IMG/VR virus record: IMGVR_UViG_3300042359_000853
Coordinates: 1-64,000 of that record
Direction: 5' to 3' (one strand)
Length of the DNA stretch: 64,000 nucleotides
The notes beneath the pieces were generated by a model, which was given only the letters and a program-made list of their open reading frames with translations, was not told the DNA's origin and did not search any database. The translations under genes were made by a program, and so were the position numbers. Positions 3,511 through 41,585 of the stretch are shown one piece after another. Each line of letters begins with the position of its first letter. Within the stretch, counting starts at the first letter, position 1.

Positions 3511-3876
3511 TCATAGTTCTTCCCTGTTTTGGTCGGTTTGGTTACCATCATCCCCTTCATCGGATAGAAGATCTCTTAGCTTACACTCTCTAATGGCTTG
3601 AGTTACTATTTCATCAGAAGCAAATTTAACGTCGTGACCACGGGAATCACAACTATAGACTAATTTACCATCACTAGAATAGTATTCTCTACTCCAAAAT
3701 CCATTAGAATCTCTGAGTAGGTAATTTCTTCCGAGATGATCCCAAAACCATCTAGTGCAAGTACCATCTTCTTCTTCTCTGTAAATAAGTTGGTGGTGCT
3801 CGTTTTGGATATCAAGATTACCATTCACCGAGAAATCCCAATCGAGTAGTTCAGATATTTTAGGCCACGGATTCAT
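3511..3876 (-). CDS. Hypothetical protein with short beta-hairpin-like repeats
   Basis: REEEDGTCTRWFWDHLG / RDSNGFWSREYYSSDG / SCDSRG periodicity; C-term RECKLRDLL. Confidence 0.6.
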   Translation of the reverse strand: MNPWPKISELLDWDFSVNGNLDIQNEHHQLIYREEEDGTCTRWFWDHLGRNYLLRDSNGFWSREYYSSDGKLVYSCDSRGHDVKFASDEIVTQAIRECKLRDLLSDEGDDGNQTDQNREEL

Positions 3877-4301
3877 TTTTGTGGAATTGTAATTATAGTG
3901 CCGCTTTTAAGGCCAAGCTCCCTAGCTAAGTGCCAACAAGAATCTGCCTGGGTCAGGTCACCTTGAACATGGTGGATACTTCCAAGCAGTAGCAAGGCCT
4001 CTGGTGTTGGATACCAAATAAGTGTTTGCTCGACAAGAGCTCTAGCTTCGGTGTATCTACGTTCATAAACCATTTTTTGAGCTCTTACTAAATTTTGAAT
4101 GATTAAATCTGTGGTGAAGTTAAATTTTTCATAAGTAAGTTGACGGGCCAGTGGAGGTATCGTATCCTTGGGTTTTTGTAGAGATGTTGAATCTTCACGT
4201 TTCTCGCGACCCCGCTCGGTATAGATACGAAATCTCGAACCTTGATAGCAAGAGACAAGTAGTAAAAATGAATAGAACAGAAGTGGTAAGAATTTTTTCA
4301 T
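3873..4301 (-). CDS. Putative lipoprotein with TPR-like helices
   Basis: MKKFLPLLFYSFLLLVSC signal and lipobox; YTEARALVEQTL..PEALLLLGSIHHVQGDLTQADSCW TPR pattern. Confidence 0.6.
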   Translation of the reverse strand: MKKFLPLLFYSFLLLVSCYQGSRFRIYTERGREKREDSTSLQKPKDTIPPLARQLTYEKFNFTTDLIIQNLVRAQKMVYERRYTEARALVEQTLIWYPTPEALLLLGSIHHVQGDLTQADSCWHLARELGLKSGTIITIPQK

Positions 4302-4957
4302 GATGGGTCTTGGGATAATATTCTATTTATTCTAGTTTCTCTTCTAAGTTGTAGAGGCATTACTTTTTCTATCATTCGCATAAAAGCTGCTCTTCTAGCC
4401 TCTTCATAACTTTGGAATCTAGGTATTCCATTGAAAAGTTCCGATTTTCTTTGATCCAGAAATTCACGGACTGAACTTTTCATATTCGTCACATGAAAAG
4501 TAAAAAGTTGAATATTAGGCATCCAATCAACTGAATATTTTAGGTAGTGAACTTCTCTGAACCACCAATCGGCAAGTGCGTAAGTGGGGTAATATTCAGA
4601 GTTACCCAAAAAACCAACTTCTTTGAGCTGTTCAAGTAGATCGCTCTCGATCATATCGACTGGTTTGAGTGGCATGTTGTAATTAGAGAGAGAGAGGAGA
4701 TGGTGAGTAAAATGAGATAAGAGGTAGTAAGAACTACCTAAACCTAATAGAGTTGCTAGATTGAAATTTTTCTGGGGATCCTCGTAGCAGGTTATTCCCA
4801 GCATGATGATGGTGATTAGAAGGCTCAAGAGGTCAAAAGCGGGGATATCCCTACCGAATCTTCCGAAAAAAAGATATTCCACGAGTCCAAAAACAAAAAC
4901 AAGTAGGTAAAGTGCTCGTAAATTGGTGAAATGCTCCCGTGATAGAAATCTTTTCAT
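4298..4957 (-). CDS. Membrane protein (N-terminal TM helices; C-term RETRINRIL)
   Basis: Three hydrophobic segments in the first 90 aa. Confidence 0.65.
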   Translation of the reverse strand: MKRFLSREHFTNLRALYLLVFVFGLVEYLFFGRFGRDIPAFDLLSLLITIIMLGITCYEDPQKNFNLATLLGLGSSYYLLSHFTHHLLSLSNYNMPLKPVDMIESDLLEQLKEVGFLGNSEYYPTYALADWWFREVHYLKYSVDWMPNIQLFTFHVTNMKSSVREFLDQRKSELFNGIPRFQSYEEARRAAFMRMIEKVMPLQLRRETRINRILSQDPS

Positions 4958-5040: not shown

Positions 5041-5271
5041 ATGACATTTGTAGAAATAATTGGCTGGCTCTCAACTCTGGTGGTTTTCATTTCATTTTCT
5101 CAAAAATCCATGAAACGACTTAGAGTAGTTTCGATTGCTGCTTGCCTGTTATGGTCTTGGTATGGATATTTAAAATCTGATATGCCCGTTATAGTTACGA
5201 ATATTTCAATTATTTTCATACATATCTCGGCTCTTTATCGTGAAAAAGGTTCAGACGTAACGAGTTCCTGA
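5041..5271 (+). CDS. Small inner-membrane protein (YgjV / PQ-loop-like)
   Basis: EIIGWLSTLVVFISF..MKRLRVVSIAACLLWSWYGYL..PVIVTN; three TM helices. Confidence 0.6.
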   Translation: MTFVEIIGWLSTLVVFISFSQKSMKRLRVVSIAACLLWSWYGYLKSDMPVIVTNISIIFIHISALYREKGSDVTSS

Positions 5272-5652
5272 AATAACTCTAGGTGAAGGTCTTTTTTCTA
5301 TAGCTAAAAAATCTTCATATTGGTGTATGAAACCGGTTTGATTTATGAAATCTAAAAGTTTATCTCTTTGTGTGAGAGTTGTATAATCAAGTAGGGGATC
5401 TAAGTTCTTTATAAAAGGTATATAAAGACCCAAGGCAGAAACATTCCAGAAATTTTCTGTAAATCCTTGAAAATCTAGAGTAATATTTGGTCTTACACCA
5501 GATTCAGACCTAAAAATTATCCGAGTATCTCTACCTAGAAAATCTGAAATATCGCCTGGAAGCTCGTGTGAGTAATCTCCTGATATTAGAACAGTAGCGG
5601 ATGTTCCAATGAAGGGCTCAAGATGATGTCTGTAAATTTCAAAGTTTTTCAT
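5251..5652 (-). CDS. Hypothetical protein
   Basis: 133 aa ORF converging on the previous gene; natural composition. Confidence 0.65.
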   Translation of the reverse strand: MKNFEIYRHHLEPFIGTSATVLISGDYSHELPGDISDFLGRDTRIIFRSESGVRPNITLDFQGFTENFWNVSALGLYIPFIKNLDPLLDYTTLTQRDKLLDFINQTGFIHQYEDFLAIEKRPSPRVISGTRYV

Positions 5653-5717
5653 ATCTAAATATATTAAATATTTCCTGTTTTGTTCGAGTAGTAATCAAAC
5701 TTCTTTTTCTGAGCGTC

Positions 5718-5725
5718 TATAAATA
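5718..5725 (+). promoter_or_regulatory. TATAAATA box (exact T4 late-promoter consensus)
   Basis: 14 nt upstream of ATG 5740. Confidence 0.45.
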
Positions 5726-5739
5726 AGAAAAAAACATTT

Positions 5740-7314
5740 ATGAAACAAAAATTATTACTACTTCTCTTTCTACTAGTAAGTAGTCTGTCGGAAGCTCAAA
5801 ATCTAGTAGATACCGTAAGAACGAATATCACTACCAACACAACCTGGAGACGGGATAGAATTTATCTTATCGAAGGCTATCGGTTTGTAAAAGATGGAGC
5901 TACTCTAACAATCGAGCCAGGCACTACTATTAGAGGTGATAAAGCTTCGAAAGGCACACTTATTATTACAAAGACCGGAAAGATCCTAGCCAACGGAAAT
6001 GATACAATGCCTATTGTATTTACCTCGAATCAACCACAAGGAACTAGAACTTATGGTGACTGGGGAGGTATCGTAATCCTGGGAAACGCACCTATCAATG
6101 TTCCTGGTGGCATAGGTATTATCGAAGGTGGTCTTCTTGGGCAAGATGCTACTTATGGGGGAAATAACCAAGATGATAGTTCAGGAGTTTTTAGGTATGT
6201 TCGTATTGAATACCCAGGCATCGCCTATCAGCCAAACTCTGAAATAAACGGATTAACTCTCGGTGGTGTAGGTCGTAAAACACAAATCGATCACATACAA
6301 GTTAGCTATTCTGGTGATGATGCCTTTGAGTGGTTCGGTGGAAATGTAAATTGTAAATACCTAGTAGCACACAGAGGTTGGGATGACGATTTTGATACTG
6401 ATTTTGGATATTCTGGAAAGGTTCAATTCGCCTTATCAATGAGAGACCCAAATATTTCAGACCAATCCCAATCCAATGGACTTGAGTCTGATAACGATGG
6501 AACCGGAACTTTTAATACACCCTTTACTTCACCTCTATTTTCTAATGTAACTATTATTGGACCTAGAGAGGGTGGTAACCCGGCTTCACTCTACCGTAGA
6601 GCTATGCATCTTCGTAGAAATACCAGAACTTCTATCTATAACTCTCTTTTTACTGGTTATACAACTGGTCTTCATATTGATGGACAAGCATCTCAAGCAG
6701 CAGCTACTCTCGATAGCCTTCAGCTAGAACGTGTTATACTCTGTAATATGCTAAATAACTTCGAGCAAACATCTGGTCAAAATACCTGGCAAGGTATGAA
6801 CTCCTATTTTTTAGATTCAACTCGTCAGAACCAAATTATTGATAGCACATTTCGATTGGGTCTTCGCCCGGGTTACGCAAACTTGGGTAGTCCAGACCTC
6901 GTGCCAGATTCAGGAAGTTTATTGTTGAGTGGTGCTAATTTTACAAATCCCCGATTGAGTGATGGATTTTTTGATACCGTGAGTTTCATTGGCGCTTTTG
7001 GCCTAGTAGATTGGACTAGGGGCTGGTCAAATTTCAATCCAGATACCGTTCATACCTCTGTAGAAGTCGTAAATCGAACCGTAACAAGGGTTTATCCGAA
7101 CCCAGTTACACAAGGTCTATTTACTATTCAGTTAGATGAACTTCCACAAGATGTGCGTGTATTCGATATTCGTGGTAGGGAGGTTCAATCTTCATGGAGT
7201 CAGATCTCTGAAGATGCCATCCGAGTATCTCTGGATACAAATAAAGTTGGTCTAATGACCGTTCTTATTCAAGATAAACTTTCCTTAAAGATATCCAGAA
7301 TAGTAGTTCGGTAA
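5740..7314 (+). CDS. Secreted beta-helix-like protein with T9SS type A C-terminal sorting domain
   Basis: Signal peptide MKQKLLLLLFLLVSSLSEA. Core DDSSGVFRYVRIEYPG..EINGLTLGGVG..DDAFEWFGG resembles a Bacteroidota surface-protein family. C-term VYPNP..VRVFDIRGREV..KISRIVVR. Confidence 0.75.
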   Translation: MKQKLLLLLFLLVSSLSEAQNLVDTVRTNITTNTTWRRDRIYLIEGYRFVKDGATLTIEPGTTIRGDKASKGTLIITKTGKILANGNDTMPIVFTSNQPQGTRTYGDWGGIVILGNAPINVPGGIGIIEGGLLGQDATYGGNNQDDSSGVFRYVRIEYPGIAYQPNSEINGLTLGGVGRKTQIDHIQVSYSGDDAFEWFGGNVNCKYLVAHRGWDDDFDTDFGYSGKVQFALSMRDPNISDQSQSNGLESDNDGTGTFNTPFTSPLFSNVTIIGPREGGNPASLYRRAMHLRRNTRTSIYNSLFTGYTTGLHIDGQASQAAATLDSLQLERVILCNMLNNFEQTSGQNTWQGMNSYFLDSTRQNQIIDSTFRLGLRPGYANLGSPDLVPDSGSLLLSGANFTNPRLSDGFFDTVSFIGAFGLVDWTRGWSNFNPDTVHTSVEVVNRTVTRVYPNPVTQGLFTIQLDELPQDVRVFDIRGREVQSSWSQISEDAIRVSLDTNKVGLMTVLIQDKLSLKISRIVVR

Positions 7315-7334
7315 TTTTTTATCCGGTTTTTTCT

Positions 7335-7371
7335 AGAGGCGTAGGAAATATTTCCTATGCCTCTTTTTTTT
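7335..7371 (+). terminator. Intrinsic terminator
   Basis: agaggcgtaggaa-ata-tttcctatgcctct hairpin followed by T run. Confidence 0.85.
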
Positions 7372-7423
7372 GTTCTAGAGAGTAAACTTCTAAATATATA
7401 AATTTATAATCCTGTCATCTTCG

Positions 7424-7606
7424 GTGAAAGAAAAAATCTTCTCAACTATTGTTTTTACACTAATCTGGTTACTTGTAATCTGGGTATTAAGATTTTATAC
7501 AAATTTAGTTTTTGGAAATCCAGGATTTATAACTAGCTCAATAATAATATTCGTAGGATTTTTACTTGCTCACCTTTTTACGCCTTTACTTACAAAAAAC
7601 GAATAA
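7424..7606 (+). CDS. Small two-TM membrane protein
   Basis: 60 aa, two hydrophobic helices, GTG start. Confidence 0.55.
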   Translation: MKEKIFSTIVFTLIWLLVIWVLRFYTNLVFGNPGFITSSIIIFVGFLLAHLFTPLLTKNE

Positions 7607-7613
7607 CCAAAAA

Positions 7614-8147
7614 ATGCTACTTCGCTCTATTTTTCTTCTGATTTTACTACTTCTTTCTGCCAGAGGCCATTCTCAAATCTATCTTAATGGTGATACAATA
7701 AACGATCAAACTTGTAGAAGAGTTGGTCTTATTCAACTTGATTGGACAGAGACTATCGATACGTCATCTTCGAATGTTATACTCTATTATACGGTTCATA
7801 TTGATAAAATAATCGATGAGAAAAAACAAGAAGAGTTGGATAAGTTTTTAGATAAAAATTTAGTAGGGGGCAGAGGTGATACCCTTGTTTATTATTTTTA
7901 TTACTATAGATATGATCTAGAAACACTTTCATCACTTCTATCTCATTATAGTTTAAAAACTTCACTAGAGGTTAGAAAAATGATGTTTGTAAAAATTGGC
8001 GCTTGGGGTCTGGGCGCTGGAGTTGCCTTTATAAATCCCGTAGCAGGACTTTTAGTTATCTCAGCTGGAGAGATTTGGAGTTTGAAATGTCTAAGGAATA
8101 TTTCTAGAGATAGTATCGAGATGAGTGTCGATGTTCAAGGAAAATGA
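7614..8147 (+). CDS. Exported/membrane hypothetical protein
   Basis: Likely start MLLRSIFLLILLLLSARGHS (signal peptide) at 7614; C-terminal glycine-rich hydrophobic hairpin. Confidence 0.65.
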   Translation: MLLRSIFLLILLLLSARGHSQIYLNGDTINDQTCRRVGLIQLDWTETIDTSSSNVILYYTVHIDKIIDEKKQEELDKFLDKNLVGGRGDTLVYYFYYYRYDLETLSSLLSHYSLKTSLEVRKMMFVKIGAWGLGAGVAFINPVAGLLVISAGEIWSLKCLRNISRDSIEMSVDVQGK

Positions 8148-8148
8148 A

Positions 8149-8237
8149 AAAGGAGTCAAATCTAGTTAAAGGCCACTTAGTTTCAAGAAGTTTGGGACTA
8201 CTTACAAAACTCACCTCTACTGTTGATTGACTCCTTT
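8149..8237. ncRNA. Candidate structured intergenic RNA
   Basis: 11-bp terminal inverted repeat aaaggagtcaa/ttgactccttt plus internal hairpin 8178..8200 that pairs fully only with G-U wobbles on +. Confidence 0.3.
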
Positions 8238-8302: not shown

Positions 8303-9310
8303 ATGGCTTTAATTACCATTTCAGCAATCACTAGTTCAACTATACCCAGAGATGGACTTAATTTTTGGTTTGATGCGCAAAATCATCCAAATCTACCAAA
8401 CAACAACACCGCCACAGATAGATCTGGTAATTATGGGGATTTTACCCTGGTGAATAACTCAACAAAAGTAAGTTATAGTGATGATTTTAGTGGTAGCTTT
8501 AATTTCAGTGGCGCAACCGATAATTACATAAAAACTCCTGTTAACAGAACTAGCACATCTAATACTGTTACCTGGATTGTATGGTTCAGAAGAAATGCAG
8601 AACAGGTCGAATACGCTGGTCTTTTCTATAACAGAACCAACGGAGCAACAGCTGGCTTACATTTTGGTAATTCCGGTAATACTTCTAAATTGAGGTATAC
8701 TTGGAATAATTCACATTTTGATGTTGAAACTAATCTTTTGACTTCTATCAATGTATGGACTTTCTGTTCTGTTGCAGTTAGATCGAATGGGGCAACTTTC
8801 ACAATGATAAGTGCGACAGGTTCAAAATCTGTTTACTCCCATACTTCTGTAACTAACGCAGCACTTAGTCTAACATCTTCTTTTCTTGGTTGGGATGGGT
8901 TTTCTACAAGATATTTTAATGGTAGAATATCACAAGCCTTTTTTTATACCAGAGATCTTTCAGATAGTGAAGTTCAGGCTATTTATAATCACACACTTTA
9001 TAGGAATTATCCGTTAGGATATTCCCTACCTCCAGCCACAACAACTACCTCTACTACTACTGCGTTCTCTGGATATTATGTATATACAGATCTCAACCAA
9101 GGTGATTGTTCGAGTGGTGGTGGAATTGAAGCTTATGGAATTAGGTCGACATTTGCAGGACTACAGGACGGAGATTATCTTTATACTGACTTAGGTATAA
9201 ATCCCCTTCAAGGTTACTCAGTAATAGGTGATACATTTTTGTATTTTACAATAGATCCAGAAACGGGCAGAATATCAGGTTCTGGAACTCTATGTGAACA
9301 GCCCCAATAA
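8303..9310 (+). CDS. LamG / concanavalin-A-like lectin domain protein (probable virion fibre or decoration)
   Basis: GLNFWFDAQN..DRSGN..FNFSG..TWIVWF..FNGRISQAFFYTRDLSDSEVQAIYN; Thr-rich linker, then C-terminal domain. Confidence 0.75.
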   Translation: MALITISAITSSTIPRDGLNFWFDAQNHPNLPNNNTATDRSGNYGDFTLVNNSTKVSYSDDFSGSFNFSGATDNYIKTPVNRTSTSNTVTWIVWFRRNAEQVEYAGLFYNRTNGATAGLHFGNSGNTSKLRYTWNNSHFDVETNLLTSINVWTFCSVAVRSNGATFTMISATGSKSVYSHTSVTNAALSLTSSFLGWDGFSTRYFNGRISQAFFYTRDLSDSEVQAIYNHTLYRNYPLGYSLPPATTTTSTTTAFSGYYVYTDLNQGDCSSGGGIEAYGIRSTFAGLQDGDYLYTDLGINPLQGYSVIGDTFLYFTIDPETGRISGSGTLCEQPQ

Positions 9311-11683: not shown

Positions 11684-12022
11684 ATGTTCTTACACTCAAG
11701 TAACCTAACCAGATCATTAGTAGATCACTACCACAAAACAAAGTTTTCTCACAAGTTCGTTCAAAAAGATGATGGGACTATTTCACTTCGTATGGAAGTT
11801 CCTGGCTTCACAAAGGATACTCTCTGGGTTCAACTCATGGATGGCGTTCTTAATGTATCAGGTAAATATAAAAGTGATGGGGTAACCTATAAGGTAAACA
11901 CTACTCTGGAAGTTCCAAAAAATGCCGATCAAGAAACAGCCACCGCTCAGGTTGAAAACGGTATCTTAACAGTCACTATGAACACTAAAACCACCAAGTG
12001 CTATAACTTACTCAAAAAATAA
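11684..12022 (+). CDS. hsp20: Small heat-shock protein (alpha-crystallin domain)
   Basis: LRMEVPGFTK..DGVLNVSG..ATAQVENGILTVT. Confidence 0.85.
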   Translation: MFLHSSNLTRSLVDHYHKTKFSHKFVQKDDGTISLRMEVPGFTKDTLWVQLMDGVLNVSGKYKSDGVTYKVNTTLEVPKNADQETATAQVENGILTVTMNTKTTKCYNLLKK

Positions 12023-12050: not shown

Positions 12051-13928
12051 ATGAAAAAAGACGTAATCATCGGTATTGACCTAGGAACAACTAACTCAGC
12101 GGTAGCTATTGTTGAGGCGGGAGATTCAGTGATCATTCCAAACTCTGAAGGCCGCAGAACAACACCATCGGTCGTTGCCTTCACCGATAAAGACCGAAGA
12201 ATCGGAGATCCTGCTAAAAGACAAGCAGTGACCAATCCCCAAAAAACCATCTACTCTATTAAGAGATTTATTGGTAAGAGCTGGGCAGCATCGAAAGACG
12301 AAGCTGGCAAAGTTCCCTACACGGTGAAATCAAGCTCAAACTCTACACCCGTCGTATCGATTGATGATAGAGATTATACCCCTCAAGAAATCTCAGCGAT
12401 GATCCTTCAGAAAATGAAAAAAACCGCCGAAGATTATCTAGGTTACGAAGTTACACGAGCTGTTATTACCGTTCCTGCTTACTTCGGAGATGCCGAAAGA
12501 GGCGCAACGATGGAAGCCGGTCAAATCGCTGGGCTTAAAGTCGAGAGGATTATCAACGAACCTACAGCAGCTGCCCTGGCCTATGGTTTAGATAAAAAAG
12601 GTCAAGACTCAAAAATCTTGGTTTTCGACTGCGGAGGTGGAACCCACGACGTATCAGTTCTTGAAATTGGTGATGGTGTATTCGAGGTAAAATCAACCGA
12701 TGGTGATACCCATCTAGGTGGTGATGACTTTGATAATGCGATCATTGCCTGGATGACCGGTGAGTTCAAAAGTGACACTGGTATCGATCTAACGAAAGAT
12801 CCAATGGCATTACAACGACTGAAAGACGCAGCTGAAAAAGCAAAGATCGAACTTTCTTCTTCACTTTCAACCGAGGTCAATCTTCCCTATATTACGGTGA
12901 AGGATAACGTTCCTCAACACTTTGTGAAATCTCTTACCCGTGCTAAGTTCGATCAACTTACCAAATCACTCGTTGATAGAGCAGTGGCCTGTGCGAAAAG
13001 TGCTCTAAAATCTGCTGGTCTTAAGCCAAGTGAGATTGATGAAGTAGTTTTAGTAGGTGGTTCTACTCGCATTCCAGCTATTCAAGATGCTGTCGAGAGT
13101 TTTATTGGTAAAAAAGCCAATAAATCTGTAAATCCAGATGAAGTCGTAGCAATGGGAGCAGCTATTCAAGGTGCTGTTCTTACCGGTGATGTTAATGATG
13201 TTCTTCTACTAGACGTTATTCCACTCTCGTTCGGTATTGAAACCATGGGTGGTGTAATGACCAAACTTATCGAGGCCAACACAACTATTCCAGTAAGAAA
13301 GCAGCAAACTTTCTCAACAGCTGCTGATAATCAAAACTCAGTTGAAATCCACGTTCTTCAAGGTGAAAGGCCGATGGCATCAGATAACCGTTCGATAGGC
13401 AGGTTCCATCTTGATGGTATTATGCCAGCTCCGAGGGGTGTTCCACAAATCGAGGTTAGTATTGATATCGACGCTAATGGTATCCTAAGTGTTAAAGCTC
13501 AAGATAAAGCTACTGGTAAAGAAAACAAAATTCGTATCGAAGGTGGTTCTTCTCTAACACCAGAGGAAATCCAACGTATGAAAGACGAGGCTATTCAGAA
13601 CGAGGCTGAGGATAAACGTAAGATGGAAACTGCCGAGCTTGTCAATAAGTGTGATACTCAAGTATTCACTACTAAAAAATCACTCGAAGAGTGGAAGGAC
13701 AAGTTTACACCCGAGCAGCTAGAAGAGCTTCAAAAACTGGTCGGCCAGCTCGAAGAGGCTCTCTCTCAACGAGACGAGACTAGGATGAAAGAAGCTTCGT
13801 CTTCTCTTGAGTCGACTTTCTCCAAAATTTCTACCGAGATTTATTCTAAAATCAGTAGTGAAGAAGGTTCTAGTTCAAGTGGTGTAGAAGATGTAGAATA
13901 TACAACGGTTGAAGATCAAGACAAGTAA
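12051..13928 (+). CDS. dnaK: Chaperone DnaK (Hsp70)
   Basis: [61 protein letters not shown]. Confidence 0.98.
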
Positions 13929-28351: not shown

Positions 28352-29274
28352 AATTTATTTTGTTTAAGAAATTCGAGTGCTATTTGAGATTCGTTTTGAT
28401 TTTTGAATCCATGATAGAATAATACTTCACTTGAGTTTCGACAATACGTATATCCATCTTCTTCAAGGTAGGTATCTAAAATATTCGGATCCATTTCAAC
28501 TTTTTTAAGTATTTCACTTTTATGAGTATTTACAAAAATTGTTTCATAATTTTTTTCAACACTTCTTCTCCAAAGAATGATATTTATTGCTGTTTCCTCG
28601 TGAAAAGGTAGATATTCTTTACCTCTTCTTCGTATCCAGGGATTTTCTATGAGTGATTTCCATTCTAAAATAAAATCTTCACACTTTTCACCAAAACTAA
28701 TTACACAGGTTCCAACATATCTCATCGATCTTTTTTTAACACCGAAAAGACACATAAGTGCTGCTTCGTTGTAGATAATTGTCCCAGGTGTTCCGGTAAC
28801 CCTACCATCAATATCGACTTCAACAGCTAGTCTTTCTTGACCATCAGATCCAATGTATTTCAATGTAGGATTCCATATTTTAGCTTTGGAGTAATGTGGT
28901 CCAAAAATTATTGGAAAAGAATGGGATATTGTCGTGAGGAGAGGATAGTCCTCATCATTTTCAAAATAGTCGATATTAAATCTTTTACCGACAAGAATAT
29001 CACAATCCATGAACAAAAAATCACCACCAAAATGATTTAATGCGTGAAATAAAATAGCTGGTTTATAAAAATAAAAATCAGTGCCGTATTCTTTTACTGG
29101 TTCAAAATATTGACATATAAGATTTGGATAGTCAAGTTGTGATTCAAATCCAATTGTATAATATATTATAGGTATAGTATAATTGGTTCTTATTATTATA
29201 GACTCAACGAGATTTTTAGCTTGAAATTCATAATTTTTATCGGAAAGAATAATAATTTTTCTTGAATTTTTCAT
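28348..29274 (-). CDS. GT-A-fold glycosyltransferase-like protein
   Basis: YFYKPAIL..FLFMDCDI (DxD)..HEETAIN..LFYHG. Confidence 0.6.
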   Translation of the reverse strand: MKNSRKIIILSDKNYEFQAKNLVESIIIRTNYTIPIIYYTIGFESQLDYPNLICQYFEPVKEYGTDFYFYKPAILFHALNHFGGDFLFMDCDILVGKRFNIDYFENDEDYPLLTTISHSFPIIFGPHYSKAKIWNPTLKYIGSDGQERLAVEVDIDGRVTGTPGTIIYNEAALMCLFGVKKRSMRYVGTCVISFGEKCEDFILEWKSLIENPWIRRRGKEYLPFHEETAINIILWRRSVEKNYETIFVNTHKSEILKKVEMDPNILDTYLEEDGYTYCRNSSEVLFYHGFKNQNESQIALEFLKQNKL

Positions 29275-31589
29275 ATCAATCCATTTTGTTTTAGTTTTTC
29301 AAAAATAAATTCTGGTTCAATTGTTCTAGTACATTCAAACCATTTTGTTGAACCTTTATGTTCCGGACACCAAGTCCAGTCACCTGGATCGAATTTCCAG
29401 TCAGTTGTTTTAGTGAAACAAGAATTACATACTTGTTGGTTTTGTATTCTTATAATGTCTTGTGTAAATTCGTTGTCAGCAGAGGTAACTCCTGATATCA
29501 TAACTACTTCTTTCCCAAGTGCGTGAGCAACCCAAGAAAGACCAGAAGAAACTCCAATAAAAAATGCAGAATGTTGTATAATATTCACTACTTCATCGAA
29601 ACTTAGTCCTGTTTTACGAACCGAGGAATGAGGTAAAGAATTCCACCAACCTTCAATTCCAAAAACTTCGTGAAGATCCACCGCAACTGGTATTAAATCG
29701 ATTTTTCTCAACATTTTTGATAAAATTTCCCATCCGTTGGGATAGTTCCAATATTTACACTGGGAGGTAGATTGAACCCCTAGGCAAACATATTTGTCCC
29801 TAATAGGTCTTGGTAATTTAGATCTTTTGATGAGTGGTCTGAGTTCTTTATATTCAAGTTCAAGTTGATCTGAAAAACCTTTCATGACCGGTCTATCAAA
29901 TTTGTAATCAAGATAAATTATATTAGTAAAGTTTTCATCAAAATGTTCTTTTTTCTCTAATAAATTCAGGTTTGGAAAATCCGAAGGATCGAAAATATCT
30001 ACACCTTTCACGTAAAGATCACACACTATATTTTTCATCAGTGCGAATTCTTGAGCATACCTTACTGAAACTATTTTATCACCAAGAGCATCACTATTAG
30101 AGACAATAATAGTTTTTTGAGAAATTTTTTCTTTTTGATTAAAATAATCTAGAAGTTGTCGTTCGTTCAAGGAGTAATAAAACCCGTTTTCGTCGGCTTG
30201 AGAATCAATTTGAACACCATCAATGTAGTAATTTTTTCTAGTTTTTATGGTAAGATAACATCTAGTTTTTTCAACAAAAGATTTTACAGTATCTGGTTCT
30301 AGATCGAAACTCTCGATAACAAGCAAAATACGCTTATTTTCAAGAGAAAGTTCTTCTTTATGTAAAATTTTGGATCCCTCTTTTACCTCAACAACCCATT
30401 CTATAAATTCTCCATCTCTAAATGCTGAAGACCATATGTTTGTTGATTTTTTCGTAAGACTATGGTATATGACTCTTCCTGTTTTCTTATCACTAAAAAC
30501 AACAGTCCCATCAAAAGAAAAACCTACTTTACAAAAAGCTCTTCTAGATGAAAAATTTATAATGATTCCCTTGGTGTCGGGAGTAGACCTAGATGTCTTT
30601 TTAATTTTGTTGTAATTATATAAAAGTTGATCTCTTTCACTCACTTGGTAGAATTTTTTATAATTTTGGATCATTCTACCAACTACCAAATCCCAAGAAA
30701 AACTTAGACGATTATCAATAATTTGGTTGGTCAAGCTATCGTATTTCTTGAAAGCATTCCCAATCGCCTTCTCTAAAGAATCTATCTCTGGGGAGCAATT
30801 TATTAGTCCAGGTAAAGATTCATTGCAAACCCCAACAACTGGCATACCCACAGATAAAGCTTCTAGAATTGTTAAATTTGGATGACCAGCTTCTAAATTA
30901 GAAGGATGCAAAAATAACTGGTAATTTTTCATTCTATCAATAGATTCTTTGTAATCTAAATCATATAGAATAGTTAAATTTTTGTAATCTGGTTTCCAGA
31001 AATCAAAGAAAGTTTGATTACTGGATGGGCACATGATATGAATTTCGAAGCCGAACTTTTTAGCACATTCGATACCTAACAAAAAACCCTTTCTATCTAT
31101 GGTTCTGTCGCCACCCATACCATTATTTGCCATCATCAATAATTTTGGGTTATCTATACGAACTTTCTCGGATCTATCAATTAAGGGATAGTCTTCTAAA
31201 TTTACACCGTGTGGGAGATATACTATTTGTTCGAGTTCGTCGAAATATTTTATCAAATGTTTTGAGTGCACAAATGTAAGCTTCGAATTTTTAATAGCCC
31301 TGTAATTTTCTTTATAAACCGCTGAATCTTTTCCGAAATACTCTACGTGATGATCATGTAGGGAAAAAACATAAGGGATCCCCTTTTGATATAAAATATT
31401 TGCCAAATTGGCCATGTGAACATGTATAATTTGACCATGCCTATATTGTATATCATCAAGATAAAGAATTTCTACCTCATACCCGAGTTTCTCTAGTGAG
31501 AGTTTATATTCCCAGATTATTTTTTCAACCGCACCCCATCCATTTGGTGGTATGGGTATATTACCAGGTGTTACTTGAATTATCTTCAT
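29271..31589 (-). CDS. GT4 glycosyltransferase fused to autotransporter-heptosyltransferase-like (TibC/Aah-type) domain
   Basis: N-term GWGAVEKIIW..EAGHPNLTILEALSVG (GT4); C-term SDALGD, QSTSQCKYWN..GW, GVSSGLSW, CNSC..WCP..FEC. Confidence 0.75.
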   Translation of the reverse strand: MKIIQVTPGNIPIPPNGWGAVEKIIWEYKLSLEKLGYEVEILYLDDIQYRHGQIIHVHMANLANILYQKGIPYVFSLHDHHVEYFGKDSAVYKENYRAIKNSKLTFVHSKHLIKYFDELEQIVYLPHGVNLEDYPLIDRSEKVRIDNPKLLMMANNGMGGDRTIDRKGFLLGIECAKKFGFEIHIMCPSSNQTFFDFWKPDYKNLTILYDLDYKESIDRMKNYQLFLHPSNLEAGHPNLTILEALSVGMPVVGVCNESLPGLINCSPEIDSLEKAIGNAFKKYDSLTNQIIDNRLSFSWDLVVGRMIQNYKKFYQVSERDQLLYNYNKIKKTSRSTPDTKGIIINFSSRRAFCKVGFSFDGTVVFSDKKTGRVIYHSLTKKSTNIWSSAFRDGEFIEWVVEVKEGSKILHKEELSLENKRILLVIESFDLEPDTVKSFVEKTRCYLTIKTRKNYYIDGVQIDSQADENGFYYSLNERQLLDYFNQKEKISQKTIIVSNSDALGDKIVSVRYAQEFALMKNIVCDLYVKGVDIFDPSDFPNLNLLEKKEHFDENFTNIIYLDYKFDRPVMKGFSDQLELEYKELRPLIKRSKLPRPIRDKYVCLGVQSTSQCKYWNYPNGWEILSKMLRKIDLIPVAVDLHEVFGIEGWWNSLPHSSVRKTGLSFDEVVNIIQHSAFFIGVSSGLSWVAHALGKEVVMISGVTSADNEFTQDIIRIQNQQVCNSCFTKTTDWKFDPGDWTWCPEHKGSTKWFECTRTIEPEFIFEKLKQNGLI

Positions 31590-31597
31590 AAAGGAAA

Positions 31598-34500
31598 TTA
31601 TTTATTCGGAATCTGAACAGTATCTCGTAAATCTTTGGATTTTCCGCTAAAAACTACTCTGTTTTGATATACAACTTCCCACGACAATAGAGAACCATCT
31701 ACTATATTCCAGGACCAAGAGGATTCATAATTTGCTAATTCTTGTTCTAAAATTTCTTCTCGACCATCATCATATACTAATATAAATTTTATTCCAATAT
31801 TATTGTTCGTAAGATTTCTAGAGAAGAACATAAAGTTATCTGAATTTTCAACTCTGTAAACACCCGTGAAGAAATCCTTGAAATTATTAGAAAAATTAGA
31901 GATAGAGGCCTCTGTATTCCAAATAGTATCTGTTAAAATACTATCCATAATTCTACCATTATGTATTTTCAATTCTTTCGGGTTTGTTTTTTCAAGAAGT
32001 CTTCTAAATAACACTTCTACAGTTACAAAATCTCTACTATGCCACTTTTTTTGTATAAAATCTAAGTAATCACTCTCTTTACTAAATTTTGGTATTGTAT
32101 CTAAAAAATAATCAATATTCCAGAACTGAAGATGAAAAGATATGTTATTTTCTTCAGTTTCTGTGGATTCATCGTAGTCGTTAAAAAATAACACCGCTTT
32201 TTGGTCATTACTCTCCATTTCAAGTGCGATATCATAGATTTTATCTAGTGAACGATTACCATATAGATCGTCACATTCAATTCTCACCACATTTGTGTAT
32301 CCGAGTGATTTTGCTAAGCTCATTGCGTTATGAAAATTTACCATTACAGATAAACCGTGTTTTTGAACACCTTTTGTAAAATTTTTCAGAGTGAAAATCC
32401 ATTTACTTTCAAGAGAGACATAATCATTTATAATTATTTCTTTAACATTTGAATATTCTTCACGAAATAATTGATTTCTACGATCATAGTAAAAAAAATC
32501 AACCATTTGTTGTATTTCTCTATCAATTGTTGTATTAGATACTAACATCAAATCAAATCCTCTAATTTTGAACCTTTCGATCTGCTGAATTAGTCTTTCT
32601 TTCACTCTTCTACTTGATACATAACTATCTAAAATTACTAGAGTTTTTTCTAGACCTTTTATTTGGATATCAGTTTTTGTTAATTCTTTATCCCCATGAA
32701 TATTTTTTGATATGAAAACCACACCTTTTTCCTGTGAAGTGCCGTTTATCAGAGTTTTACAATCTTCTTCAAAAATTTGATACTGGTATCCAAGCTTAAT
32801 GATTCTCAAAATTATTTGATTTCTAAGTATATCTTCAAAGTTATCGTGGAACTCTAATATAATATTCTCTATCTTGAGTAAATTCTGATCAGAAAGACCC
32901 TCGAAGGCTTTATATTCACTACCTTCGATGTCCATTTTCATGAGAGAGACTTTCTCAATACCAGAATCAGCAAAAAAGCTATCTAAGTCTATTGATGAAA
33001 TTTCGAAATGTTTATCGGTGATATTGATGGCAGAGCTAATAATTGAATTGTTTTGATCTTCATAGATTTTTATCTTTTCTTTTTTATCCCAAACAGCGTT
33101 TTTTACAAGACTAACTCGTGAATCCTCACCGTGTAAATTATTAAATACCTTGACTGCTTTATCAGAAACCTCAAAAGCTATTACTTTTTTTGCTCCTTTA
33201 TCTTTTGCTAATTCCGTGAATAGTCCAATAGAACTACCAACATCTAAAATCAGATCAAGTGAGTTTATACTAGAAAGAAATTGATCATAAATTCTATCTG
33301 TAAAAAATTGTTCGAAATTTACAAAAATAGGTTCATAAGTATCGATTCTAAACTTTTTTTTCTGAACATTAATCATCTTTATCTGATATGATTGAGAATA
33401 TAGTAAATTTCCACCATGATCGTAGAAATCAATAAGAAATCCTGAGAAATTTGGATTTTCTGAAAAATCATAATAGGATTTTGGTAGTGGTATTGCCCAA
33501 TAATTATTTTTATTTTCGAATTTTGCATCAAATGAAAAAATAGGAATTTGAGTATCCATATCTCTAATACAAACCATCATATCGAAAGGAAGGTCATGTA
33601 AATAATTTAGAGTCAATTTATTATCTGAACTATCAAAGTCAATATCAAATAATTTTTGGTTGAAAAATTCTGGTTTGATTAGTGTGTAGTTGTTTAATAA
33701 GTCTAGCATAGAGTATAATATTTTTGAATTTTCTTCTAAATCTTGGACCATCCATTTCAATTTCGAAGATTCTGTGTAGGTGTTCATATAGACGGGTATA
33801 TTTCTGAGAAAAAGTGGTATTTCCCAAGCGATGGCTTCTTTTATAGCAAGTGGGTTCGTTTCAGTATCACCATATCTACCTTCTGATGGGAAAATTACGG
33901 CATCCATACAAGAGTAAAAAGTATGAACATCGCTTCTTTCCCTCCAAATTTGACAATTTGGTGGTTTATTATCAATCAAATCTTGCCAATGACCCCTATA
34001 ATTATCAGGAAGAGCTCCAACAAAATGAAACTGAACATCAGGCATTATTTTTGCTAGGGAGAAGGTAAATCGTTGATTTTTTCTATTAGAGAAAAGTCCT
34101 ACTTGAAGAACATGCCTTTTTGTAGGATCGAGTCCTAATGTTTTCATACCTAATTCCCTATTTCTCTCACCGGTCGTAATTTCATGCTCGATAATTTCGA
34201 TGGGAATCCCAAGAGGTAGGAAATTTTTGACTTGCCACAGACTCACAACAAGCATCTTATCTGGTAGATACTTTTTCTCACGATGATCGATCGACGAGTC
34301 ATGAAGTGTTTCAAATATTTTCCAAGTTCTTGATGGTGAATATATTTTATCTAGTAATGGATGTGGCAGAAAATGGTCTGAAGTTTCTTCGAAATGAACC
34401 ACATCAGGTGAAATTTTCTGTAATAAGGTAAAAAGTTTTTTATAATTTTGATCGAGTGAAACCAATCTCGAACCAATCATCCCCTCTATTTTTTCTCGAA

Positions 34501-34636
34501 TCGTCGTATATTGTTTTTCATATACTAATTCGAAAACCCATACTTCGTTGTCTGTGTGTAATAGTTCTACTTTTTTTCTTAAATACTCTGGCATTCCACC
34601 AGTAGAAAGATGTGGTGTAATATAAACTATTTTCAT
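31598..34636 (-). CDS. Multidomain GT4 glycosyltransferase + FkbM methyltransferase + C-terminal domain
   Basis: HLSTGGMPEY, ETNPLAIKEA (GT4); LDVGSSIG..AFEV..LMKMDIEGSE (FkbM); start at MKIVY. Confidence 0.8.
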   Translation of the reverse strand: MKIVYITPHLSTGGMPEYLRKKVELLHTDNEVWVFELVYEKQYTTIREKIEGMIGSRLVSLDQNYKKLFTLLQKISPDVVHFEETSDHFLPHPLLDKIYSPSRTWKIFETLHDSSIDHREKKYLPDKMLVVSLWQVKNFLPLGIPIEIIEHEITTGERNRELGMKTLGLDPTKRHVLQVGLFSNRKNQRFTFSLAKIMPDVQFHFVGALPDNYRGHWQDLIDNKPPNCQIWRERSDVHTFYSCMDAVIFPSEGRYGDTETNPLAIKEAIAWEIPLFLRNIPVYMNTYTESSKLKWMVQDLEENSKILYSMLDLLNNYTLIKPEFFNQKLFDIDFDSSDNKLTLNYLHDLPFDMMVCIRDMDTQIPIFSFDAKFENKNNYWAIPLPKSYYDFSENPNFSGFLIDFYDHGGNLLYSQSYQIKMINVQKKKFRIDTYEPIFVNFEQFFTDRIYDQFLSSINSLDLILDVGSSIGLFTELAKDKGAKKVIAFEVSDKAVKVFNNLHGEDSRVSLVKNAVWDKKEKIKIYEDQNNSIISSAINITDKHFEISSIDLDSFFADSGIEKVSLMKMDIEGSEYKAFEGLSDQNLLKIENIILEFHDNFEDILRNQIILRIIKLGYQYQIFEEDCKTLINGTSQEKGVVFISKNIHGDKELTKTDIQIKGLEKTLVILDSYVSSRRVKERLIQQIERFKIRGFDLMLVSNTTIDREIQQMVDFFYYDRRNQLFREEYSNVKEIIINDYVSLESKWIFTLKNFTKGVQKHGLSVMVNFHNAMSLAKSLGYTNVVRIECDDLYGNRSLDKIYDIALEMESNDQKAVLFFNDYDESTETEENNISFHLQFWNIDYFLDTIPKFSKESDYLDFIQKKWHSRDFVTVEVLFRRLLEKTNPKELKIHNGRIMDSILTDTIWNTEASISNFSNNFKDFFTGVYRVENSDNFMFFSRNLTNNNIGIKFILVYDDGREEILEQELANYESSWSWNIVDGSLLSWEVVYQNRVVFSGKSKDLRDTVQIPNK

Positions 34637-34703
34637 GTTATTTTTATATCCCATATCCTGTAATAGTTTTTGTAAACAAATAACAAATTAAATATATACT
34701 ATA

Positions 34704-37140: not shown

Positions 37141-39084
<1,944 letters not shown>

Positions 39085-39085
<1 letters not shown>

Positions 39086-40562: not shown

Positions 40563-41585
40563 ATGTCTAAAGATTACTATGGAATACTAGGTGTTGATAG
40601 AGGAGCATCGAGTGAAGAAATAAAAAAAGCATACCGTAAAAAAGCACTCGAGCACCATCCAGACAAAGGAGGAGATGAAAATAAGTTCAAAGAGGCCTCT
40701 GAAGCCTATGAAGTTCTCTCTGATAGTGATAAAAGAAGTAGATACGATAGGTTTGGAACCGCAGAACCAGGTCATGGTGGGGGTTTTAATCCAAATGATT
40801 TCTTCTCTGGTTTTGGTGATATATTTGGTGATATGTTCGGAAGAAGACCCGGCGCACAAAGAAGAGGTCAAGATATCCGTGTTCAAATTCAACTTAATAT
40901 TTTAGACATTTTGACAGGTGTAAGAAAAAAAATCCGATACAATCGAAACGCCAAGTGTGAACCGTGTCAAGGTCAAGGTGGTCAAAATTTTCAGGCTTGT
41001 TCTTTCTGTGGAGGAAGTGGTCAAAAAATAACTATCGCGAATACCCCGTTTGGGAGAGTTCAACAATCAGTTACTTGCCCGACATGCAGTGGGAGAGGCC
41101 AACAAATAAAAGATAAATGTCGAAGTTGCTCCGGATCAGGAGTAAAATCAGTCGAAGAGGTTGTAGAAGTTGATATTCCACCAGGAGCAGTGGGTGGTAT
41201 GCAAATGGCAGTTCCCGGTAAAGGACACGCAGTTCAAGCTGGAGTAGAAGGAGATCTTCATGTTTTAATCCAAGAGTTAGAGCATGAAACCTATAAAAGA
41301 GACGGACATAATATCAATATTGATTATTGGTTAGATATTCACCAAGCAGTTTTGGGTTCTCGAATTCAAGTGGAAACCCCACAAAAAAATATAGAACTTT
41401 ACATTCCATCAGGAACCGAATGGGGTAAAGTATTTACCTATCAATCTCTCGGGGTTCCCGTGATTGACGGTCACGGACATCAGAGAGGCCGAGGGGATCT
41501 TAAGATTATTATTAAAATAAAAATACCAAAAATTTTATCAGGGGAGCAGCGAGAAATATTTGAGAAATTGAAAGAAGTTTCTTAA
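40563..41585 (+). CDS. dnaJ: Chaperone DnaJ (class A)
   Basis: J-domain with HPD, G/F region, four CxxCxGxG motifs, C-terminal GDL domains. Confidence 0.97.

What the first reader, a model, noticed from the sequence alone, without database searches (positions are those of the whole stretch)
5740..7314. Phage-encoded cargo for the host type IX secretion system
Seen: Sec signal peptide, a large Gly/Asp/Asn-rich parallel-beta-helix-like core, and a C-terminal YPNP-containing domain ending in a basic/hydrophobic strand; own TATAAATA box and terminator. Known: this C-terminal domain is the T9SS type A sorting signal of Bacteroidota. Inference: the phage exports a protein to the infected cell surface or medium through T9SS, for receptor masking, nutrient capture or adhesion, which is unusual for a virus.
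Basis: partly seen in the sequence, partly recalled or inferred. Interest (0 to 1): 0.65.

Follow-up and report, generated by a model that had tools for sequence, protein, structure and literature searches.

The report
Phage-borne T9SS-exported beta-helix surface protein
A very large lake-water phage of Bacteroidota carries a gene for a beta-helix protein built to be exported by its host's type IX secretion system; in bacteria this protein family sits beside an outer-membrane nutrient importer, so the phage probably alters the infected cell's uptake surface. Phage-encoded T9SS cargo has been reported before.

Summary
ORF 5740-7314 (+) encodes 524 aa: a Sec signal peptide with an A|Q cleavage context, a right-handed parallel beta-helix (AF2 pLDDT 87.9; Z 20-23 to NosD, tailspikes and lyases), and a seven-strand C-terminal domain. 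That domain matches Por_Secre_tail at the curated cut-off (25.7 or 29.7 bits against 27) and the NucA CTD bound in the T9SS translocon (TM 0.72).

The record is a real tailed phage (terminase, sheath, prohead protease). It is not a chimera, because at least 15 contigs keep the same synteny. A second, canonical T9SS cargo lies elsewhere in the genome.

The core belongs to Pfam Beta_helix_4. In bacteria, 66 of 70 assessable loci have a TonB-dependent transporter (TBDT) next door. The family is common in phages (216 IMG/VR stretches, three clades). It is anchored either by a T9SS CTD or by a lipoprotein signal, and about half the phage copies also bring the transporter. The window's clade is phage-only and has no transporter. 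Both core and CTD are under purifying selection, and metatranscriptome contigs fall only inside the ORF.

Most likely it is displayed on the infected cell and works with, or blocks, the host's transporter. Phage T9SS cargo was already reported (Bellas 2020; de Jonge 2019), so this is a new member of a known kind.

The parts
5718..5725 (+). TATAAATA box 15 nt upstream of the start codon; a possible promoter element, not demonstrated
   Evidence: Sequence read. Weak enrichment only. It does not match the Bacteroidota TAnnTTTG consensus (my own reading).
5740..7314 (+). Whole gene, 524 codons plus stop: phage Beta_helix_4 protein with a T9SS type A C-terminal domain
   Evidence: RNA-library contigs at 99% identity or more lie only inside it, at 5754-7174.
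5740..5796 (+). Sec / signal peptidase I signal peptide (aa 1-19), predicted cleavage SEA|Q exposing an N-terminal Gln (Bacteroidetes Q-rule)
   Evidence: Sequence; modelled as a helix at residues 2-14; rule from PMC5837995. The same A/G|Q context occurs in 59 of 62 non-lipoprotein viral homologs by a crude pattern. No SignalP-type predictor was available.
5797..7044 (+). Right-handed parallel beta-helix core (aa 20-435), Pfam PF28492 Beta_helix_4 (pectate-lyase-like). It keeps all family-invariant acidic and basic residues (GDWGG, SGDDxFEWFGG, DDDFDTDFG, ESDND, RxxHxRR).
   Evidence: Precomputed Pfam; Atlas clusters; model; VIA-align Z 20-23; invariant columns.
7045..7080 (+). Flexible linker (aa 436-447) between the core and the CTD
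   Evidence: pLDDT below 50 at residues 444-447.
7081..7311 (+). T9SS type A C-terminal sorting domain (aa 448-524): seven-strand Ig-like sandwich, with YPNP at aa 452-455 and ending KISRIVVR
   Evidence: PF18962 at 25.7 and 29.7 bits; TIGR04183 at 19.9 bits; 8glk_D TMt 0.72; profile hits to 8glk_D, 8qb1 and 5jvk; HMM from bacterial homologs E 2.8e-6; dN/dS 0.24-0.43 with no indels.
7335..7374 (+). Intrinsic-terminator-like hairpin (13-bp stem, 6 GC pairs, 4-nt loop) followed by a T-rich tail

Best explanation
The gene belongs to a huge tailed phage of freshwater Bacteroidota and is made in the infected cell. Its product crosses the inner membrane through Sec, and signal peptidase I cuts after Ala19 to expose Gln20. 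The folded beta-helix is then recognised through its type A C-terminal domain by the host's T9SS, passed across the outer membrane, and left on the cell surface or released once the CTD is removed.

The beta-helix comes from a bacterial family (Pfam Beta_helix_4) that is the near-obligate gene neighbour of one type of TonB-dependent transporter. That family is always routed to the surface, either by a T9SS CTD or by a lipoprotein signal. I therefore infer that the phage copy acts at the infected cell's surface on or with the host's cognate transporter. Most likely it works as an extra substrate-capturing (probably glycan-binding or glycan-cleaving) subunit that raises uptake during a long infection.

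Shown: gene, domains, phage origin, conservation, neighbourhood statistics, and presence in RNA libraries. Inferred: export route, surface location, partnership with the transporter, and the benefit to the phage.
For: Phage identity:
- TerL, tail sheath and prohead protease lie on the same 227,583-bp record.

Not a chimera:
- The identical protein is on at least 15 contigs from several samples with the same neighbours, and it is internal in a 279,825-bp contig.
- Orthologs of 80-92% identity keep the same synteny.

Export signals:
- A signal peptide with A|Q is present (PMC5837995).
- The CTD is detected by Pfam and TIGR models at or near the cut-offs, by fold against a translocon-bound CTD, and by an HMM built only from chromosomal homologs, which hits just this ORF and one other of 233.
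- Phage orthologs score 29-42 bits, above the cut-off.
- The second cargo in the genome scores 48.7 bits on TIGR04183.

Constraint and expression:
- dN/dS is 0.07-0.12 in the core and 0.24-0.43 in the CTD.
- Nine contigs from four metatranscriptome runs of three studies all lie inside the ORF, and none lie in the 1.4 kb of flanks that were laid with it.

Link to the transporter:
- A TBDT is adjacent in 66 of 70 assessable bacterial loci and 33 of 64 viral loci.
- The 635-kb phage LR745206.1 carries a lipoprotein-type homolog followed directly by a TBDT.

Surface site of action:
- CTD forms and lipoprotein forms alternate within single clades, in phages and in bacteria alike.
Against: - No experiment shows secretion.
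- The host is unknown, so the presence of a T9SS and of a cognate transporter is assumed.
- Two of the three HMM scorings of the CTD fall just under the curated cut-offs.
- The usual G-x-Y motif reads G-L-M here.
- The window's phage (39% complete) and five related phage records hold no TBDT. The partnership must therefore be with a host protein, and I could not test this.
- The substrate of the family is unknown, and the fold match is generic for beta-helices.
- The RNA evidence rests on assembled contigs of read length, so DNA carry-over cannot be excluded.
Confidence: 0.6

Rival explanations
1. Receptor masking or superinfection exclusion. The exported beta-helix docks on the host's cognate TonB-dependent transporter, which would be the receptor of this or of rival phages. 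It occludes the receptor, so infected cells and their debris stop adsorbing virions. This is how T5 Llp acts on FhuA.
For: The family is the dedicated neighbour of a TBDT. About half of the phage copies are orphans, against about 6% in bacteria, as expected if the phage needs only the part that covers the transporter. The window's clade lacks the TBDT in five further records. That TBDTs are common phage receptors is my own knowledge.
Against: Other phage clades carry the transporter together with the partner (33 of 64 loci; LR745206.1), which points to uptake rather than blocking. All family-invariant residues of the putative ligand groove are kept, and the core has dN/dS of about 0.1. A mere plug would not require that. 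Nothing indicates which receptor this phage uses.
Confidence: 0.2
2. Secreted polysaccharide depolymerase. The pectate-lyase-like beta-helix cleaves a capsular or extracellular (probably acidic) polysaccharide. The phage releases it through T9SS before lysis to strip neighbouring cells for its progeny, or to free oligosaccharides.
For: The fold is closest to tailspike depolymerases, alginate epimerases and lyases, and the pectate lyases PL9 and PL6, at Z 20-22.6. Pfam and the Atlas name the family 'pectate-lyase like'. Invariant Asp/Glu clusters plus Arg/His recall Ca-dependent lyases (my own reading). The partner TBDTs weakly resemble the carbohydrate-type TIGR01782 group (191 bits, below the cut-off of 310).
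Against: No sequence match to any CAZy-type lyase or hydrolase family was found in Pfam or NCBIfam. The top structural match is NosD, which is not an enzyme. I could not map catalytic residues onto a known active site. This rival is also compatible with the main explanation, as an enzyme feeding a transporter.
Confidence: 0.15
3. Virion tailspike or receptor-binding protein. The beta-helix is a structural depolymerase spike, and the signal peptide and CTD are relics of its bacterial origin.
For: Beta-helix tailspikes are among the best fold matches. An Ig-like C-terminal domain is common on virion proteins.
Against: A cleavable Sec signal would take the protein out of the cytoplasm where virions assemble. 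The CTD is under purifying selection. Sister phages replace the CTD with a lipoprotein signal, which is another export route. The gene lies about 185 kb from the sheath, protease and terminase block, among small non-structural genes. There is no N-terminal virion-attachment domain. The closest cellular kin are partners of transporters.
Confidence: 0.04
4. Artefact. The stretch is host DNA, either a mis-assembly or a provirus flank, and not a phage gene.
For: The gene lies 5.7 kb from the end of a linear, incomplete record. Its GC is 40.3% against a genome value of 33.5%. Its homologs are overwhelmingly bacterial.
Against: The same gene in the same context is found on at least 15 contigs, including one where 4.3 kb or more of further phage-like genes lie beyond the window's left end. 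Fourteen lake metagenome runs hold the stretch whole. It falls in a clade with 100% support made only of viral or unplaced short contigs. Its GC is within the range of the phage's own long ORFs (maximum 43%).
Confidence: 0.01

Closest known systems
T9SS cargo genes of 'Cryophage' (Bellas et al. 2020, PMC7468147) and T9SS sorting-domain ORFs in crAss-like phage clusters (de Jonge et al. 2019, PMC6949934)
   Same: These are phage genomes of Bacteroidota that encode proteins with a type A sorting domain, read as hijacking the host T9SS to alter the cell surface.
   Different: The passenger domains differ: an endoglucanase, a GH39, a PA14 protein and BACON repeats there, against a Beta_helix_4 core here. 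The cargo here is conserved across a phage clade under purifying selection rather than hypervariable. It is also tied to a transporter-partner family.
Bacterial TBDT + Beta_helix_4 gene pairs, for example Hymenobacter sp. BT18 CP050954 (P0084) and Sphingobacteriales CP064999 (P0056)
   Same: They have the same three-part architecture and length (about 530-540 aa), 46-49% identity, and all invariant residues shared.
   Different: The bacterial gene lies directly downstream of an approximately 920-aa TonB-dependent transporter. The window's copy has none within 227 kb. The function of the bacterial pair has not been characterised, as far as my searches show.
Surface accessory proteins of SusC-like transporters (SusD, SGBPs), BtuG, HmuY-type binders (my own knowledge)
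   Same: It may work like them: a surface-exposed protein encoded next to a TBDT in Bacteroidota that captures or processes the substrate.
   Different: There is no sequence or fold relation. Those are helical (SusD), propeller (BtuG) or other folds, and are mostly lipoproteins. Physical association with the transporter is not shown here.
Phage T5 Llp lipoprotein, which blocks FhuA (my own knowledge)
   Same: It is a phage-made envelope protein aimed at a TonB-dependent transporter. This is the model for the masking rival.
   Different: Llp is a small periplasmic-face lipoprotein with no homology. It is not a copy of a host partner of the transporter.
Outer-membrane proteins of huge phages, including a Lak-phage TonB-dependent receptor (bioRxiv 10.64898/2026.10.24.761521)
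   Same: These are huge phages of Bacteroidota that encode and transcribe host-like envelope proteins.
   Different: That work does not mention T9SS, secretion or this beta-helix family (0 occurrences). The window's phage carries the partner but not the barrel.
NosD (7o0y_A), the closest solved fold
   Same: It is a right-handed parallel beta-helix of similar length: Z 23.2, 271 aligned residues, rmsd 3.1.
   Different: Identity is 12%. NosD is the periplasmic part of an ABC complex for maturation of N2O reductase. The Z score is tied with many carbohydrate-active beta-helices, so the match says nothing about function.

Membership tests
T9SS type A cargo (TIGR04183 / PF18962 Por_Secre_tail) | HMM match to the sorting-domain model at or above the curated cut-off | tested here: inconclusive
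   PF18962 scores 25.7 bits on the whole protein (cut-off 27) and 29.7 bits when the stretch is scored alone. TIGR04183 scores 19.9 bits (cut-off 23). Phage orthologs score 29.2-41.6 and 34.1 bits, above the cut-off.
T9SS type A cargo (TIGR04183 / PF18962 Por_Secre_tail) | The domain lies at the extreme C-terminus and covers the full model | tested here: met
   Profile positions 1-75 align to residues 451-523 of 524.
T9SS type A cargo (TIGR04183 / PF18962 Por_Secre_tail) | Compact seven-strand Ig-like beta-sandwich (PMC11285876) | tested here: met
   The model has seven strands between residues 450 and 523, with pLDDT 86-91. TMt is 0.72, with 27% identity, to the NucA CTD in the translocon complex 8glk_D.
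T9SS type A cargo (TIGR04183 / PF18962 Por_Secre_tail) | N-terminal Sec signal peptide | tested here: met
   The n, h and c regions and the SEA|Q site are read from the sequence. No dedicated predictor was available.
T9SS type A cargo (TIGR04183 / PF18962 Por_Secre_tail) | The producing cell has a T9SS; secretion and CTD removal depend on it | not testable with these tools
   The host is unknown. A Bacteroidota host is inferred from homologs, the Q-rule context, and a second canonical CTD protein in the genome.
Pfam PF28492 Beta_helix_4 (pectate-lyase-like beta-helix) | Match to the family model | tested here: met
   The precomputed Pfam 38 hit is listed for this protein. Atlas clusters are 100% PF28492, with TM 0.94-0.96. 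The model is absent from the local Pfam copy, so I could not rescore it.
Pfam PF28492 Beta_helix_4 (pectate-lyase-like beta-helix) | Family-invariant residues retained | tested here: met
   There are 79 invariant columns across 34 sequences, including the phage protein.
Operonic partner of a TonB-dependent transporter | A TBDT gene immediately adjacent on the same strand | tested here: not met
   There is no Plug or barrel domain, and no tblastn hit, in the 227,583-bp record or in five related phage records. It is met in 66 of 70 bacterial loci and 33 of 64 viral loci.
Phage tailspike depolymerase | Cytoplasmic protein with an N-terminal virion-attachment domain, encoded in the structural module | tested here: not met
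   The protein has a signal peptide and an export CTD. There are no PHROG structural neighbours, and the structural genes lie at 190-215 kb.
Polysaccharide lyase (PL1, PL6, PL9) | Sequence membership and a Ca-site plus catalytic-base arrangement | tested here: inconclusive
   No Pfam or NCBIfam lyase hit was found. The fold match is Z 20-21.6 to Pel9A and PL6 lyases.

The most novel reading that the evidence does not exclude
Phages of freshwater Bacteroidota systematically remodel the host's TonB-dependent uptake machinery. They carry the surface beta-helix subunit of one transporter type, and sometimes the barrel as well. They route it to the surface through the host's T9SS or its lipoprotein pathway. 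Orphan copies such as this one plug into the host's own transporter, either to feed the infected cell or to shut a receptor to rival phages. That would make this family a widespread, previously unrecognised class of phage-encoded envelope effector, and the first T9SS cargo of a phage with a defined host target.
Probability: 0.35. Interest if true: 0.7.

Novelty: new member of a known kind. Interest (0 to 1): 0.45.

Why it matters
If the export route and the link to the transporter hold, three things follow.

- Large phages would be using a phylum-specific secretion system to place their own proteins on the surface of the infected cell.
- They would be targeting nutrient import, which shapes carbon turnover by Bacteroidota in lakes.
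- There would be a handle on an uncharacterised but very common bacterial gene pair (TBDT plus Beta_helix_4: at least 8000 homologs, and at least 596 stretches in species genomes). The phage copies mark which half of the pair is useful alone.

For annotation, 'T9SS sorting domain' genes in viral contigs are not a sign of host contamination.

Tried and rejected
- **Chimera or host flank:** rejected.
- **Tailspike reading:** rejected on the export signals, the gene's position, and the lipoprotein variants in sister phages.
- **TBDT elsewhere in the phage:** Plug, barrel and tblastn searches found none, but the record is only 39% complete.
- **PF28492 in the local libraries:** not held, so I took family membership from precomputed hits and Atlas clusters.
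- **Foldseek against PDB:** this gave only weak, generic beta-helix hits for the core. VIA-align gave high but tied Z scores, so function cannot be read from the fold.
- **TATAAATA as a phage promoter motif:** the enrichment is weak and uncontrolled, so I make no claim.
- **NCBIfam typing of the partner transporters:** only a sub-threshold resemblance to TIGR01782.
- **Literature:** I found no paper on this beta-helix family or on its pairing with a TBDT. The library is partial, so this is not proof of absence.
- **Not attempted, complex prediction:** a prediction of the beta-helix with a TBDT was not sent, because the pair has about 1450 residues and the limit is 1000.
- **Not attempted, big representative search:** it was not needed, because the word search already returned the 8000-candidate maximum.
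- **Limit of the word search:** it sees only proteins of 288-917 aa. Longer multidomain kin, up to 1839 aa, turned up through the search for related loci.
- **First try at laying the genome:** it failed and worked on the second try.
Full report
**1. What is at the coordinates**

ORF 5740..7314 (+) is open for 524 codons. The product has three parts.

- **Residues 1-19** form a signal peptide, MKQK followed by a Leu-rich stretch and SEA|Q. It has no Cys, so it is a signal peptidase I substrate. The Gln after the predicted cut fits the Bacteroidetes Q-rule (PMC5837995, found).
- **Residues 20-435** fold, in an AlphaFold2 model built on 34 homologs (pLDDT 87.9, pTM 0.79), into a right-handed parallel beta-helix.
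- **Residues 448-524** follow a short disordered linker and form a seven-strand sandwich.

A TATAAATA box lies 15 nt before the ATG. A strong hairpin with a T-run follows the stop codon at 7335-7374. Only the promoter role of the box is unproven.

**2. Is the C-terminal domain a T9SS signal?**

- Pfam Por_Secre_tail aligns end to end (profile 1-75 on residues 451-523). It scores 25.7 bits on the whole protein, just under the cut-off of 27. It scores 29.7 bits when the stretch is scored alone.
- TIGR04183 gives 19.9 bits against a cut-off of 23.
- A profile of the family hits the CTDs of solved T9SS cargo: 8glk_D NucA, 8qb1 mirolase and 5jvk.
- Foldseek aligns the modelled domain to the NucA CTD held in the T9SS translocon, with TMt 0.72 and 27% identity.
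- An HMM that I built only from the CTDs of 13 chromosomal homologs named by NCBI as type A sorting proteins finds residues 445-524 (E 2.8e-6). Among the phage's 233 ORFs it finds only one other.
- Orthologs in related phages pass the Pfam cut-off at 34.1 bits and 29.2-41.6 bits.

I therefore accept the domain as a somewhat divergent type A CTD. YPNP is kept, but the usual G-x-Y motif reads G-L-M.

**3. Is it a phage gene?**

The window is the first 64 kb of a 227,583-bp IMG/VR record that CheckV rates 39% complete. The same record encodes:

- a large terminase at 212,519-214,663,
- a tail sheath at 193,777-197,496,
- a prohead protease at 189,772-191,901,
- a virion structural protein.

The window itself adds HSP20, HSP70, DnaJ, PurA, the small subunit of ribonucleotide reductase, and nucleases.

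The identical protein is recorded on at least 15 contigs from several samples with the same neighbours. One of them is a 279,825-bp contig in which phage-like genes continue beyond the window's left end. Fourteen lake-water metagenome runs hold the stretch whole. Orthologs of 92%, 91% and 80% identity keep the same flanking genes. The chimera rival fails.

The gene's GC (40.3%) is above the genome mean (33.5%) but within the range of the phage's long ORFs.

**4. What the core is**

The word search returned its maximum of 8000 hits. These are nearly all from Bacteroidota and Ignavibacteriota, many are named 'T9SS type A sorting domain-containing protein', and all carry PF28492 Beta_helix_4. The Atlas calls the clusters 'pectate-lyase like beta helix'.

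The fold search gives Z 23.2 to NosD and Z 20-22.6 to tailspike depolymerases, alginate epimerases and lyases, and pectate lyase Pel9A. This is a tie among beta-helices and does not fix a function.

The alignment has 79 invariant columns. They are rich in Asp/Glu clusters and include an R-x-x-H-x-R-R row, and the phage protein keeps all of them.

**5. The informative context**

In Hymenobacter and in a Sphingobacteriales genome, the homolog lies directly downstream of an approximately 920-aa TonB-dependent transporter with CarboxypepD_reg, Plug and barrel domains. I checked 80 loci from species genomes and 80 from IMG/VR.

| Source | TBDT adjacent | Full flanks, no TBDT | Flanks too short | Adjacent / assessable |
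|---|---|---|---|---|
| Bacterial loci (80) | 66 (63 upstream, 3 downstream) | 4 | 10 | 66 of 70 |
| Viral loci (80) | 33 | 31 | 16 | 33 of 64 |

- The 634,780-bp phage LR745206.1 has a lipoprotein-type homolog followed directly by a transporter.
- Four of five other viral records that I tested hold a terminase related to this phage's. Two of those four have a TBDT next to the beta-helix gene.
- In phages and bacteria alike, the protein comes in two forms: signal peptide plus CTD, or a lipobox Cys and no CTD. These are two routes to the same place, the cell surface.

**6. Phylogeny**

I built a maximum-likelihood tree of the core alone (127 rows).

- **V1, the window's clade.** It has 100% support and 13 rows, all viral contigs or short unplaced contigs. 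It contains both CTD and lipoprotein forms, and none has a neighbouring transporter.
- **V2.** It has 21 viral rows plus two MAG rows, and many members have a transporter downstream.
- **V3.** It is made of lipoprotein forms with a transporter upstream, plus LR745206.1.

The tree is a quick search, and two long branches were flagged, so I rely only on the starred clade around the window's protein. Five records of that clade (41-84% complete) contain no Plug domain, and each has the CTD above the cut-off.

**7. Constraint and expression**

Among four gap-free orthologs, dN/dS is 0.07-0.12 for the core and 0.24-0.43 for the CTD. YPNP, FD-x-x-GR and the basic C-terminal strand are all kept.

In four river or freshwater metatranscriptome runs from three studies, nine contigs of 99% identity or more fall at 5754-7174. 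None fall in 5200-5739 or 7315-8200. The ORF makes up 52% of the stretch, so this distribution is unlikely for random DNA carry-over. These are read-length contigs, however, so I call it suggestive only.

**8. Mechanism**

- **Shown:** the domains, the phage origin, the conservation, and the neighbourhood statistics.
- **Inferred:** Sec export, recognition of the CTD by the host T9SS, and surface display or release.
- **Further inferred:** action on or with the host's cognate transporter.

Because whole cassettes also occur in phages, I favour enhanced substrate capture (about 0.4 within the model). Masking of the transporter as a phage receptor comes next (about 0.2), then a freely secreted depolymerase (about 0.15). 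These are not mutually exclusive.

**9. Comparison and novelty**

Phage-encoded T9SS cargo has already been described, for 'Cryophage' (PMC7468147) and for crAss-like clusters (PMC6949934). P. gingivalis phages encode proteins that follow the Q-rule (PMC10367356). A 2026 preprint reports outer-membrane proteins of huge phages, including a TonB-dependent receptor.

The present gene is therefore a new member of a known kind. As far as my searches show, what appears to be new is:

- the passenger family,
- its tie to a transporter,
- its breadth in phages (216 IMG/VR stretches).

**10. Other points**

A second, canonical T9SS cargo (633 aa, cohesin- and dockerin-like, TIGR04183 48.7 bits) lies at 204,299-206,200 of the same record.

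Noticed in passing
outside the window: G000:C1:204299-206200 (-), locus L014:299-2200: A second T9SS cargo in the same phage: 633 aa, signal peptide ending AFG|Q, cohesin-like and dockerin-like domains, and a canonical type A CTD (PF18962 43.5-49 bits, TIGR04183 48.7 bits). A related phage record (G001) has a 640-aa ORF with a CTD of 53 bits.
   Followed up: partly
L025:5743-9583 (LR745206.1) and IMG/VR loci such as L040, L044, L081, L093, L100: Complete cassettes of a TonB-dependent transporter plus a Beta_helix_4 partner are encoded by large phages. They occur in 33 of 64 assessable viral loci, and four of five tested records hold a related terminase.
   Followed up: partly
window 11684-12022, 12051-13928, 40563-41585; G000:72471-74600: The phage has its own chaperone and protease set: HSP20, HSP70 (phrog_22485, 780 bits), a full DnaJ, and a Lon-like ATP-dependent protease (phrog_4871, 783 bits).
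   Followed up: no
window 37757-39085; L023:6581-7582, L024:1357-2358: The window has a full-length adenylosuccinate synthetase (442 aa, 507 bits). In related phage contigs a short 333-aa Adenylsucc_synt gene lies one gene upstream of the beta-helix gene. I did not examine whether the short form is a PurZ-type enzyme.
   Followed up: no
window 3873-4301 (-), 4298-4957 (-), 5041-5271 (+), 7614-8147 (+), 8303-9310 (+): The gene sits among other envelope-directed or lectin-like genes: a TPR lipoprotein (lipobox LLVSC), small membrane proteins, a conserved 177-aa protein with a signal peptide and a C-terminal hydrophobic helix, and a Laminin_G_3 / ConA-like protein. The 177-aa and Laminin_G genes keep their place next to the beta-helix gene in the orthologous contigs.
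   Followed up: partly
window 5754-7174: Metatranscriptome contigs from river and freshwater samples cover only the ORF and not its flanks. This suggests the gene is transcribed more strongly than its neighbours.
   Followed up: partly
window 29271-34654 (-): Two very large adjacent ORFs (772 aa and 1018 aa) have only a glycosyltransferase-like N-terminus and a methyltransferase-like segment recognisable. The rest is unassigned.
   Followed up: no
G000:151405-153216 (+): An ABC-transporter-like protein (phrog_2392, 378 bits) is encoded by the phage. This is another possible transport-related gene.
   Followed up: no
L019:9978-10403, L022:2537-3019, L024:4080-4505: In several phages of the window's clade, an RpiB/LacAB-family sugar-phosphate isomerase gene lies within two genes downstream of the beta-helix gene, directly next to it in L022 and L024. 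This holds for both the CTD and the lipoprotein forms. No such neighbour occurs in the window.
   Followed up: no
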